Assembly: GCF_052425735.1 (NCBI RefSeq)
Contig: NC_135761.1
Coordinates: 12,462,001 to 12,526,000 of the forward strand
Reading direction: 5' to 3'
Length of the DNA: 64,000 nucleotides
DNA from: Oculina patagonica
Taxonomy: Eukaryota
The notes under the pieces are model-generated. The model was not told where the DNA came from, made no database searches, and was given only the letters and a program-made list of their open reading frames with translations. Below, piece by piece: positions 36,312 to 37,186 of this stretch (the first letter of the stretch is position 1; each line of letters starts with the position of its first letter). The position numbers and the translations under genes were made by a program.

Positions 36312-36348
36312 GGCCTTTTGGCTAAGATCAAGTGTAGTATCTGTTCTT
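36312..36348 (+). ncRNA. U2: U2 snRNA 5' fragment (nt ~11-47, includes the branch-point recognition GTAGTA); not a full U2 gene
   Basis: GGCCTTTTGGCTAAGATCAAGTGTAGTATCTGTTCTT matches the conserved metazoan U2 5' region. The first 10 nt and everything after nt 47, including the Sm site, are absent. Confidence 0.9.
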
Positions 36349-37186
36349 CTTTTTAGGGGTTCAGATGCATAAACACTTGATCTGCCATACGATCGGCTAC
36401 GTTTCGGACTCGCCGGGCGTATGGCTGTCTCACTGAGCCTTCGGGCGTGAGCAGTCACGGGAAGTTGATCTAGGCCAAATTATTTTTCTGTTGGGTTTTT
36501 CCCCTTGTGATTTTCTTTATTTTCGGGTCTATTTTTACTAGGAATATCGAGTTCGTCTGGCGGGTAGGACTTCGGGTGGGTTTAGCTCGGCAAATTAGGG
36601 CCTTGTTTCGGGTTTTTCTTGCTCGCAGTTTCAATAGCTATTTAGTCGGGTGGATCGAGAGTCGCTTTTTTTCCCCGTTTTTCGGGTTTTTTTGCTTCTA
36701 GAATCACAGTGAACACAGTGAATTCGTAAACCTTGCGATGGGAGGATAAATCGCTTCAACTTGACCTTGACGATTATGGTGAAATCGCGTGAACTTGGAA
36801 CCTTGACGATTGGCGGTGAAATCGCGTGAATGTCCTTGCGATTGGAGGTGAAATCGCTGAATGTCCTTACTGATTGGAGGTTAAATCACGGAAACCACAA
36901 GCTTTGGAATTACAACTCAAGCTTTGAACTGGCGACAAGCCTGGAACTTTTATTACGCAAGAACTATCTTGTAAACAAGTTAAAGATTACCACTATGGAA
37001 CTTTGGACCTGGAATGGACTTGGATCATGAACTATGGAATACGACTTAAACTGGCGACGACCTTGAAATTGTAAACCGGCTTAGACCTTTAAAAAAATGT
37101 AAAAACCCACAAGCAATTTGTGAACTTAGAAAAATAAATAAAGGCGGAACACCAAACCGCCGCAAAAAAAAAAAAAAAAAAAAAAA
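36312..37186 (+). mobile_element. U2-headed non-autonomous non-LTR retroelement (Keno/Utopia-derived or SINEU-like)
   Basis: U2 head, structured 5' domain, T-rich segment, hairpin repeats, AATAAA, terminal hairpin GGCGG-N9-CCGCC and poly(A) 37164-37186. No credible ORF; no TSD seen. Confidence 0.75.

What the first reader, a model, noticed from the sequence alone, without database searches (positions are those of the whole stretch)
36312..37186. U2 snRNA-headed, poly(A)-tailed non-coding retroposon outside a U2 gene
Seen: 37 nt matching U2 (nt ~11-47) fused to ~815 nt of ORF-less sequence ending in AATAAA, a GGCGG/CCGCC hairpin and a 23-nt poly(A). The rest of U2 does not follow the tail, U2 nt 1-10 do not precede the head, and there is no TSD. 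Known: Keno (Tx1 clade) and Utopia (NeSL clade) retrotransposons insert into U2 genes around the GTAGTATCTGTTCTT site, and snRNA-headed SINEs (SINEU) are described from crocodilians. Inference: this is a non-autonomous derivative of a U2-targeting element, transcribed from a U2 locus and retroposed with part of its target as a head. It may represent an undescribed cnidarian SINEU-like family.
Basis: partly seen in the sequence, partly recalled or inferred. Interest (0 to 1): 0.8.

Follow-up and report, generated by a model that had tools for sequence, protein, structure and literature searches.

The report
U2-headed non-coding retroposon in coral
This is one of about eight copies of a small non-coding jumping element in a stony-coral genome; its RNA starts with the first 47 bases of the splicing RNA U2, and it is a new variant of known U2-targeting retrotransposons rather than a new kind of element.

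Summary
Window 36312-36348 is an exact copy of this genome's U2 nt 11-47. An 815-nt non-coding body follows, ending in AATAAA, a GGCGG/CCGCC hairpin and A23, and both flanks are single-copy DNA.

The body is a low-copy family of about 8 copies, 73-98% identical. All four copies long enough to show it carry U2 fused at the same point (nt 47). Their U2 starts differ (nt 1, 11, about 35-39, 41). That is the pattern of 5' truncation of one chimeric U2::element RNA, not of repeated template switches.

Three copies sit in head-to-tail stacks with APE+RT LINEs of the L1/Tx1 type. A 12-nt spacer equal to U2 nt 36-47 separates the stacked units, so all use one U2 site. All five off-target copies have 3' flanks beginning GTA or GTG.

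The first 35 nt of the body are a diverged inverted copy of U2. They form a 23-bp RNA hairpin with the head, and the substitutions between subfamilies keep the pairing.

Three things are missing: a master copy inside a U2 gene, an autonomous partner sharing sequence with the element, and proven transcription.

Nothing was laid, and I worked beside that place afterwards. This is a new variant of a known kind (Keno, SINEU, R2 SIDE) of moderate interest.

The parts
36312..37186 (+). Whole retroposed copy of family 'A': U2 head, non-coding body and poly(A)
   Evidence: Repeat boundaries from copies with unrelated flanks. Both flanks are single-copy.
36312..36348 (+). U2 snRNA nt 11-47, used as a 5' head that is truncated at its 5' side
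   Evidence: Identical to the genome's own U2 gene. Rfam U2 33 bits. Other copies start at U2 nt 1, about 35-39 and 41, with the same junction at nt 47.
36355..36383 (+). Anti-U2 arm: three segments (36355-36359, 36362-36368, 36373-36383) complementary to 36346-36350, 36337-36343 and 36325-36335 (the first of these is U2 nt 45-47 plus body nt 1-2). Together with the head they form a 23-bp interrupted hairpin.
   Evidence: MFE fold -66.5 kcal/mol, z -6.3, 0 of 200 shuffles. Antisense match to U2 in 0 of 300 shuffles, in family A only. The three substitutions among copies keep pairing.
36384..36453 (+). Two further 5' stem-loops: 36384-36425, and a UUCG-capped stem at 36426-36453
   Evidence: Folds. 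Three pairs change on both sides between the W-type and L005-type subfamilies (column pairs 40/67, 82/102, 84/100).
36730..36887 (+). Internal tandem repeat, 32-nt unit, 4.7 copies
   Evidence: Tandem Repeats Finder. Present in all copies that cover the region.
37133..37138 (+). AATAAA polyadenylation signal, 25 nt before the A run
   Evidence: The position is conserved in the alignment.
37143..37161 (+). Terminal hairpin GGCGG-N9-CCGCC, the most conserved block of the family
   Evidence: A genome-wide pattern search finds it only in the 8 family copies.
37164..37186 (+). Poly(A) tail, 23 nt
   Evidence: Tail length is 8-26 nt in other copies.
37187..37189 (+). First bases of the 3' flank (GTG), resembling U2 nt 36-38 (GTA), the first bases of the on-target 3' junction
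   Evidence: All five off-target copies have GTA or GTG here. The two stacked copies have the U2 nt 36-46/47 spacer.

Best explanation
Window 36312-37186 is an off-target, 5'-truncated copy of a low-copy, non-autonomous poly(A) retroposon, here called family A.

**Community it belongs to.** Family A sits among LINE retrotransposons (APE endonuclease plus reverse transcriptase, L1/Tx1 type, behaving like Keno) that insert at one site of the U2 snRNA gene. The 3' junction lies at nt 35/36 and the 5' junction after nt 47, which gives a 12-bp duplication.

**Proposed cycle (inferred).**
1. A master copy sits in a U2 gene and is transcribed from the U2 start. The element RNA is therefore U2 nt 1-47 + body + poly(A).
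2. A LINE protein supplied in trans nicks DNA and reverse-transcribes this RNA from its 3' end.
3. At a real U2 gene, the cDNA of the head can anneal to the target and give a precise 5' junction, as proposed for R2 with 28S sequence (PMC3774820).
4. At look-alike GTA sites elsewhere there is nothing to anneal to. The head stays as extra sequence, cut short wherever reverse transcription ended. In this copy that is nt 11.

**The hairpin.** Head and body form a conserved RNA hairpin. Its role is inferred only: it may mask the U2 sequence, or serve as a handle for the LINE protein.

**Shown:** family membership, the constant nt-47 junction, variable head starts, stacking with LINEs, the GTA flanks, and the hairpin with its conservation.

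**Inferred:** the master copy in a U2 gene, trans-mobilisation, and the annealing step.
For: 1. **Independent copies.** Eight copies have unrelated flanks, with identities of 73-98%.
2. **Fixed junction, variable start.** The U2/body junction is at nt 47 in all four copies that reach it, including a subfamily 16% diverged. Head starts are nt 1 (L005), 11 (window), about 35-39 (L003) and 41 (L002). Three more copies are truncated inside the body.
3. **Stacks at one site.**
   - C1208: B, A14, spacer, B, A13, spacer, A, A26, then ordinary DNA.
   - C1: A, poly(A), spacer, B.
   - C1: a B-like LINE, poly(A), spacer, LINE F.
   - The spacer is U2 nt 36-46/47.
4. **LINE B is an L1/Tx1-type LINE.** It has a CCHC ORF1, APE, RT and zf-RVT, and matches human L1 ORF2p at 1e-78 over APE+RT.
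5. **GTA flanks.** All five off-target 3' flanks start GTA or GTG. B-like LINEs in other corals end poly(A)+GTAT or GTAC.
6. **Co-transcription occurs in this genome.** Another LINE (D) carries U2 -35 to +31 as a cap. Template switching to mature U2 cannot produce that.
7. **Literature.** Keno targets U2 and occurs in Hydra. Utopia inserts in tandem in U2 genes, and its off-target sites keep U2-like motifs (PMC4494074, PMC4640811).
8. **Hairpin.** z -6.3; the substitutions preserve pairing through G-U.
Against: - No copy of A, B or F lies inside an intact U2 gene in this assembly. Only 16 intact U2 genes are assembled, in two arrays that are probably collapsed.
- No LINE shares A's 3' tail or any body sequence, so the mobilising partner is unknown.
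- Most off-target copies show no target-site duplication. Only L005 has a 6-7-bp candidate.
- Transcription is not shown.
- snRNA-type promoters are not known to give long polyadenylated RNAs efficiently (general knowledge).
- Tx1-clade membership of the LINEs was not tested by phylogeny.
Confidence: 0.7

Rival explanations
1. SINEU-type origin. A single ancient template switch (or another 5' addition) put a U2 fragment on the element. Since then dispersed copies, not a U2-resident master, have been transcribed from chance flanking promoters, and the head has merely been inherited.
For: SINEU heads in crocodilians are explained this way, and those elements are mobilised by Tx1 LINEs close to Keno (PMC4494074). 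No master copy in a U2 gene was found. L005 has a full-length head outside any recognisable U2 gene.
Against: The head ends exactly at nt 47, the 5' boundary of the duplication made at the U2 insertion site seen in the stacks. A random switch point would hit that base with a chance of about 1 in 190. A copies are physically stacked with U2-site LINEs at that same site. A sister LINE carries U2 upstream flank, which shows read-through from U2 loci in this genome.
Confidence: 0.17
2. The element has no head of its own. At each locus it inserted into an older U2 retropseudogene fragment, its normal target.
For: Its relatives do target U2 sequence, and U2 retropseudogenes exist in many animals (PMC4494074).
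Against: In none of the four headed copies does U2 continue after the poly(A). The 3' flanks are unrelated, unique DNA. The pseudogene fragments would have to start at four different points yet all lose everything beyond the insertion site. The head is 100% identical to U2, while the flanks show no U2 remnants.
Confidence: 0.04
3. It is only a truncated or rearranged piece of a longer autonomous LINE, or an assembly chimera, and not a discrete non-autonomous family.
For: Many LINE copies are fragments. Two A copies abut LINE B.
Against: Four copies share both ends and the same roughly 815-nt body, with no coding remnant. No LINE in 529 Mb shares sequence with it. Parts of it occur in runs from five organism labels and ten studies.
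Confidence: 0.06

Closest known systems
Keno (Tx1-clade, APE-type non-LTR retrotransposons specific for U2 snRNA genes; includes Tx1-1_HM of Hydra)
   Same: Same target gene and same short region of it. The neighbouring LINEs (B, F) have APE+RT of the L1/Tx1 type, poly(A) tails and tandem stacking at the site. Keno is already known in a cnidarian (PMC4494074, PMC4640811).
   Different: The window element has no ORFs and shares no sequence with the LINEs. The 3' junction here reads as U2 nt 36, whereas the Utopia paper places the shared Utopia/Keno 3' flank at nt 39 (PMC4640811). The three bases GTA could belong to either side. Clade membership of B and F was not tested by phylogeny.
SINEU (snRNA-headed SINEs of crocodilians, Kojima 2015)
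   Same: U2-derived 5' head with no internal promoter, a non-coding body, poly(A), no LINE with a matching tail, and presumed mobilisation by Tx1-type LINEs (PMC4494074).
   Different: SINEU heads are ascribed to template switching, with recurrent additions of U1 or U2 pieces of varied extent. SINEU elements are short, number in the thousands, and prefer a Mariner transposon. Here the head is exactly the part of U2 upstream of the insertion site, the element is about 850 nt with about 8 copies, it prefers the U2 site or GTA look-alikes, and it carries an anti-head hairpin.
R2 SIDEs, and R2 RNAs that keep upstream 28S sequence (Eickbush laboratory)
   Same: A non-autonomous relative of a site-specific LINE that lives on a co-transcript with the target gene. 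In R2, target sequence kept on the RNA 5' end is proposed to anneal and fix the 5' junction (PMC3414825, PMC3774820).
   Different: R2 uses an RLE endonuclease, 28S rDNA and an HDV-like ribozyme. SIDEs are demonstrable internal deletions of R2. Here no ribozyme was found, head starts do not cluster at one cleavage point, and no parent LINE is identified.
Utopia (NeSL/RLE-type U2-targeting LINEs)
   Same: Same U2 region, tandem insertions, and weakly specific families whose off-target junctions keep short U2-like motifs with few TSDs (PMC4640811).
   Different: Utopia encodes a restriction-like endonuclease. The LINEs stacked with this element encode APE.

Membership tests
Keno-like U2-site retroposon community (non-autonomous member) | Insertion at the specific U2 site, with U2 sequence on both sides | tested here: inconclusive
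   The 5' side is always U2 up to nt 47. The 3' side is U2 nt 36-46/47 only in stacks (L004, L006). No copy lies in an intact U2 gene. Off-target copies keep only GTA or GTG.
Keno-like U2-site retroposon community (non-autonomous member) | Physical association with APE+RT LINEs that use the same site | tested here: met
   Stacks of A with LINE B on C1208 and C1 share the same 12-nt spacer. LINE B has Exo_endo_phos, RVT_1 and zf-RVT domains.
Tx1 clade (for the associated LINEs B and F) | RT phylogeny placing them in Tx1 (RTclass1 or Repbase references) | not testable with these tools
   No reference Tx1 or Keno sequences were available. The best solved relative is human L1 ORF2p (1e-78), and atlas clusters are unnamed APE+RT. 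This fits the L1/Tx1 supergroup and goes no further.
SINEU | snRNA-derived 5' head on a short non-coding poly(A) retroposon | tested here: met
   U2 nt 1-47 head in 4 of 4 informative copies, poly(A), and no conserved ORF.
SINEU | Sequence relationship to SINEU-1/2/3, or the same target preference (Mariner-N4_AMi) | tested here: not met
   Target preference is the U2 site or GTA, not a Mariner element. Sequence comparison with the SINEU consensus was not possible, and that family is reported only from crocodilians (PMC4494074).
SINE in the strict sense | Internal pol III promoter head, length under about 600 nt, tail shared with a LINE | tested here: not met
   A U2 head has no known internal promoter (PMC4494074). 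T-runs of 5-7 occur in the body. Length is about 850 nt. No LINE shares the tail.
SIDE-like internally deleted LINE | 5' and 3' ends identical to those of an autonomous parent | tested here: not met
   There is no similarity of A's ends or body to B, F, D, E or any other LINE locus fetched, or to anything else in the genome.
HDV-like or other self-cleaving 5' ribozyme (as in R2) | Ribozyme fold at the 5' end and uniform RNA 5' ends at the cleavage site | tested here: not met
   No ribozyme family appears at E up to 10 in 35800-37700. The fold is a plain long hairpin. Head starts are nt 1, 11, about 35-39 and 41, and none lies at the hairpin base, nt 24.

The most novel reading that the evidence does not exclude
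The head/anti-head hairpin may be a functional target mimic. It is an RNA duplex carrying the sequence of the U2 insertion site. Through it, a non-coding parasite that shares no tail with any LINE could capture the target-recognising protein of the U2-specific LINEs. Retroposed headed copies would then act as portable landing pads, seeding new LINE stacks outside the U2 arrays, as in the C1208 stack that ends in ordinary DNA.
Probability: 0.15. Interest if true: 0.75.

Novelty: new variant of a known kind. Interest (0 to 1): 0.45.

Why it matters
Site-specific LINEs that live in small gene families such as U2 face a shortage of targets, and how they persist is an open question raised in the Utopia and Keno literature.

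This coral shows a whole community at one U2 site: several LINE families and a non-coding hitch-hiker. The hitch-hiker carries the upstream half of the target on its RNA.

That gives a clean natural example in which an snRNA head arose from co-transcription with the target rather than from template switching. It therefore offers a second route to SINEU-like elements.

It also offers a testable RNA module, the conserved head/anti-head hairpin, that may explain how an element with no LINE-like tail is mobilised.

In practical terms, the family should be added to coral repeat libraries. That would stop its head being annotated as a U2 pseudogene.

Tried and rejected
- **Transcription.** A run search for RNA found no holder on record as RNA. 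Several small runs guessed to be RNA hold 22-32% of the words. This is suggestive only.
- **Ribozyme idea.** No Rfam ribozyme hit and no common 5' end. The snoU2-30 hit on the minus strand (24.5 bits against a cut-off of 60) is a by-product of the anti-U2 arm.
- **U2-like 3' end.** Neither A nor B resembles U2 nt 48-192.
- **Anti-U2 or U2-like 5' ends in other LINEs.** B, F, D and E are not above shuffles.
- **Coding capacity.** ORFs of 54-66 aa have no Pfam hit and are broken in other copies. A protein search with the 66-aa ORF found nothing.
- **More copies in metagenome contigs.** The first pattern gave no match. The second gave 21 chance hits, mostly gut bacteria, with no similarity beyond the seed.
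- **Tail-pattern hits.** L059 and L061 are chance matches.
- **Naming the LINE clade.** Protein searches returned no source names.
- **Further genome fetches.** The 5' ends of the stacks could therefore not be read.
- **Literature.** The Keno paper of 2004 is not held. A search for 'SINEU' returned SINEUP papers only.

Full report
**1. What is in the window**

- Bases 36312-36348 are identical to nt 11-47 of the U2 gene of this same genome. I read that gene from a 2005-bp tandem repeat that links 5S rRNA, U1 and U2.
- A permissive Rfam scan recognises the window stretch as a partial U2 (33 bits, E 2e-4).
- The ten bases before it are not U2 nt 1-10.
- An 815-nt body follows. Its ORFs of up to 66 aa have no Pfam match and are broken in other copies.
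- The body contains a 32-nt unit repeated 4.7 times.
- It ends with AATAAA at 37133, a GGCGG-N9-CCGCC hairpin at 37143-37161 and A23 at 37164-37186.
- The 3' flank is not U2. Both flanks are single-copy in the 529-Mb assembly.

**2. It is a family, and the head belongs to it**

A search of the window's own genome found about eight copies with unrelated flanks. A pattern search for the terminal hairpin found the same set and no LINE.

| Copy | Identity to window copy | 5' end |
|---|---|---|
| L002 | 98% | U2 nt 41 |
| L003 | 97% | U2 about nt 35-39 |
| L006 | 95% | truncated in body |
| L004 | 89% | truncated in body |
| L005 | 84% | U2 nt 1 |
| L008 | about 73% over a short stretch | truncated in body |

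Identities come, 5' ends. The eighth copy, L007, is a 94-nt inverted fragment at the end of contig C1208.

- In every copy that extends far enough, U2 sequence is joined to the body at the same base, nt 47. The window copy starts at nt 11.
- A fixed 3' end of the U2 part with ragged 5' ends is what 5' truncation of one chimeric RNA gives.
- Independent template switches to U2 snRNA would give the opposite pattern.
- In L005 a 6-7-bp direct repeat, (A)GTATAG, brackets the insertion. The other copies have no clear duplication.

**3. Link to U2-targeting LINEs**

Three A copies are stacked head to tail with LINEs.

- On contig C1208 the order is: LINE B, A14, spacer, LINE B, A13, spacer, A, A26, then ordinary non-repeated DNA.
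- On C1, about 55 kb from a U2 array, a truncated A is followed by the spacer and LINE B.
- Elsewhere on C1 a B-like LINE is followed by the spacer and a different LINE, F.
- Further B-B junctions carry the same spacer.
- The spacer is U2 nt 36-46 or 36-47.
- With the head ending at nt 47, this reads as a 12-bp target duplication at one U2 site that several families hit repeatedly. The same has been described for Utopia in wasp U2 genes (PMC4640811).

LINE B is about 5.9 kb. It has a CCHC ORF1, an APE endonuclease, RT and zf-RVT. Its frames are broken in the copies read. An intact 83% relative from another coral matches human L1 ORF2p at 1e-78 over APE+RT, against 1e-16 for R2. These are therefore APE-type LINEs of the L1/Tx1 group. 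They behave like Keno, which is known from Hydra (PMC4494074), and not like the RLE-type Utopia. I could not run the phylogeny that would formally place them in Tx1.

**4. Off-target behaviour**

- The five A copies outside stacks have 3' flanks beginning GTG, GTA, GTA, GTA and GTA. By my estimate this arises by chance about 5 in a million times, even allowing that the first base after a poly(A) cannot be A.
- B-like LINEs in contigs of other corals end poly(A)+GTAT or GTAC.
- Two readings fit. Either the endonuclease keeps a residual preference for the first bases of its U2 site, or RNAs that read a few bases into the downstream target prime at matching nicks.
- The Utopia paper puts the common Utopia/Keno 3' flank at nt 39 (PMC4640811). 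The three bases GTA could belong to either side. The L005 duplication favours the target side.

**5. Where the head comes from**

- The head is exactly the stretch of U2 that lies upstream of an element inserted at this site. That is what transcription from the U2 start of a U2-resident master copy would give.
- A second on-target case is visible at the edge of the C1 array. There LINE E interrupts a real U2 gene at nt 31, with an 11-nt duplication.
- Against the model, the assembly holds only 16 intact U2 genes, in two arrays, and none contains A, B or F. The arrays are probably collapsed, so absence is weak evidence.

**6. A conserved head/anti-head hairpin**

- The first 35 nt of the body are a diverged inverted copy of U2 nt about 18-47.
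- Folded with the head they give an interrupted hairpin of 11+7+5 bp: MFE -66.5 kcal/mol for 149 nt, z -6.3, no shuffle as good.
- The antisense match is beyond all 300 shuffles. It is found in A only, not at the 5' ends of B, F, D or E.
- The three substitutions seen in this arm among subfamilies all keep pairing: G-U to A-U twice, and G-C to G-U once.
- Two stem-loops just downstream show three pairs changed on both sides between the two subfamilies. With two lineages this is modest evidence, but it points to selection on RNA structure.
- This agrees with a separate first-reader note on the same stretch (s1-294103).
- I found no ribozyme signature, and head starts do not cluster at the hairpin base.

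**7. Mechanism proposed**

Steps 1, 2 and 4 are inferred. The outcome in step 5 is observed.

1. A master copy sits in a U2 gene.
2. It is transcribed from the U2 start and polyadenylated at AATAAA.
3. A LINE protein nicks the bottom strand at U2 nt 35/36, or at a GTA look-alike, and reverse-transcribes the RNA.
4. At a U2 gene, the cDNA of the head anneals to the target and gives the nt-47 junction, by analogy with R2 RNAs that keep 28S sequence (PMC3774820).
5. Elsewhere, the head is retained and truncated.

The hairpin may mask the U2 branch-site and U6-pairing region, or may recruit the LINE protein. The second idea is the more novel reading, and I give it about 15%.

**8. What could not be done**

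- Expression therefore rests on a hint only. About a dozen small runs guessed to be RNA, from two related organism labels, hold 22-32% of the body's words.
- Runs from five organism labels and ten studies hold parts of the element, so the family is shared among related corals.
- Repbase and Dfam could not be consulted.

**9. Verdict**

- The element is a new variant within known kinds. It has Keno-type U2 targeting, a SINEU-like layout and R2-SIDE-like parasitism.
- It is notable for a head that comes from co-transcription with the target, and for the conserved anti-head hairpin.
- It is of moderate interest to transposon specialists and is not categorically new.

Noticed in passing
window 27861-27999 and 29055-29193 (+): Two full-length U4 snRNA genes about 1.2 kb apart (125.8 and 120 bits), roughly 7-8 kb upstream of the element. 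No link to the retroposon is evident.
   Followed up: no
window 32190-32864 (+) and 39784-40644 (-): An uninterrupted Ras-family small GTPase ORF (224 aa, Pfam Ras 6e-35) and an ankyrin-repeat ORF (286 aa) flank the region. The element lies between them in unique non-coding DNA, 210 bp downstream of an (AAAT)n microsatellite at 36008-36099.
   Followed up: partly
L009-L023 (G000:C1187:616-636 kb and C1:45.940-45.948 Mb): 5S rRNA, U1 and U2 genes are linked in one 2005-bp tandem repeat. Only 16 intact U2 genes are assembled, so the arrays are probably collapsed.
   Followed up: partly
L064 (G000:C1:45938223), L062 and L063 (C1:45877772, 45898007): There is a second U2 insertion site at nt 31. 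LINE E interrupts the last U2 gene of the C1 array with an 11-nt duplication. LINE D carries U2 -35 to +31 as a cap inside another LINE's RT. The two D loci lie 20 kb apart and are near-identical, which indicates a segmental duplication.
   Followed up: partly
L004 / L028 (G000:C4:39708428-39709300): A composite of truncated A, A12, the 12-nt spacer and the first ~215 nt of LINE B, bracketed by a direct duplication of about 50 bp of unique DNA. Its 3' end has no poly(A). The origin is unexplained.
   Followed up: partly
L005 1440-1490 (G000:C6:38501465-38501514): Upstream of the full-length head lies a 14-mer, 13 of 14 identical to a motif at -61 to -48 of the array U2 genes (a position typical of a proximal promoter element), followed by TTCGGT as in the array. 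It may be transduced flank of a variant U2 gene or chance (13 of 300 shuffles for the 14-mer alone).
   Followed up: partly
L049 (contig C1208; minus-strand positions 6092-6631 of the reverse complement): The LINE B 3' UTR contains an internal A14-24 run closed by the inverted repeat AAGGAAGG/TCCTTCC, then about 500 more nt before the terminal poly(A). This could be mistaken for two elements.
   Followed up: no
window 36318-36387 (-): A weak Rfam hit to snoRNA U2-30 (24.5 bits, cut-off 60). It arises only because the anti-U2 arm is complementary to U2; no C/D-box snoRNA is supported.
   Followed up: yes
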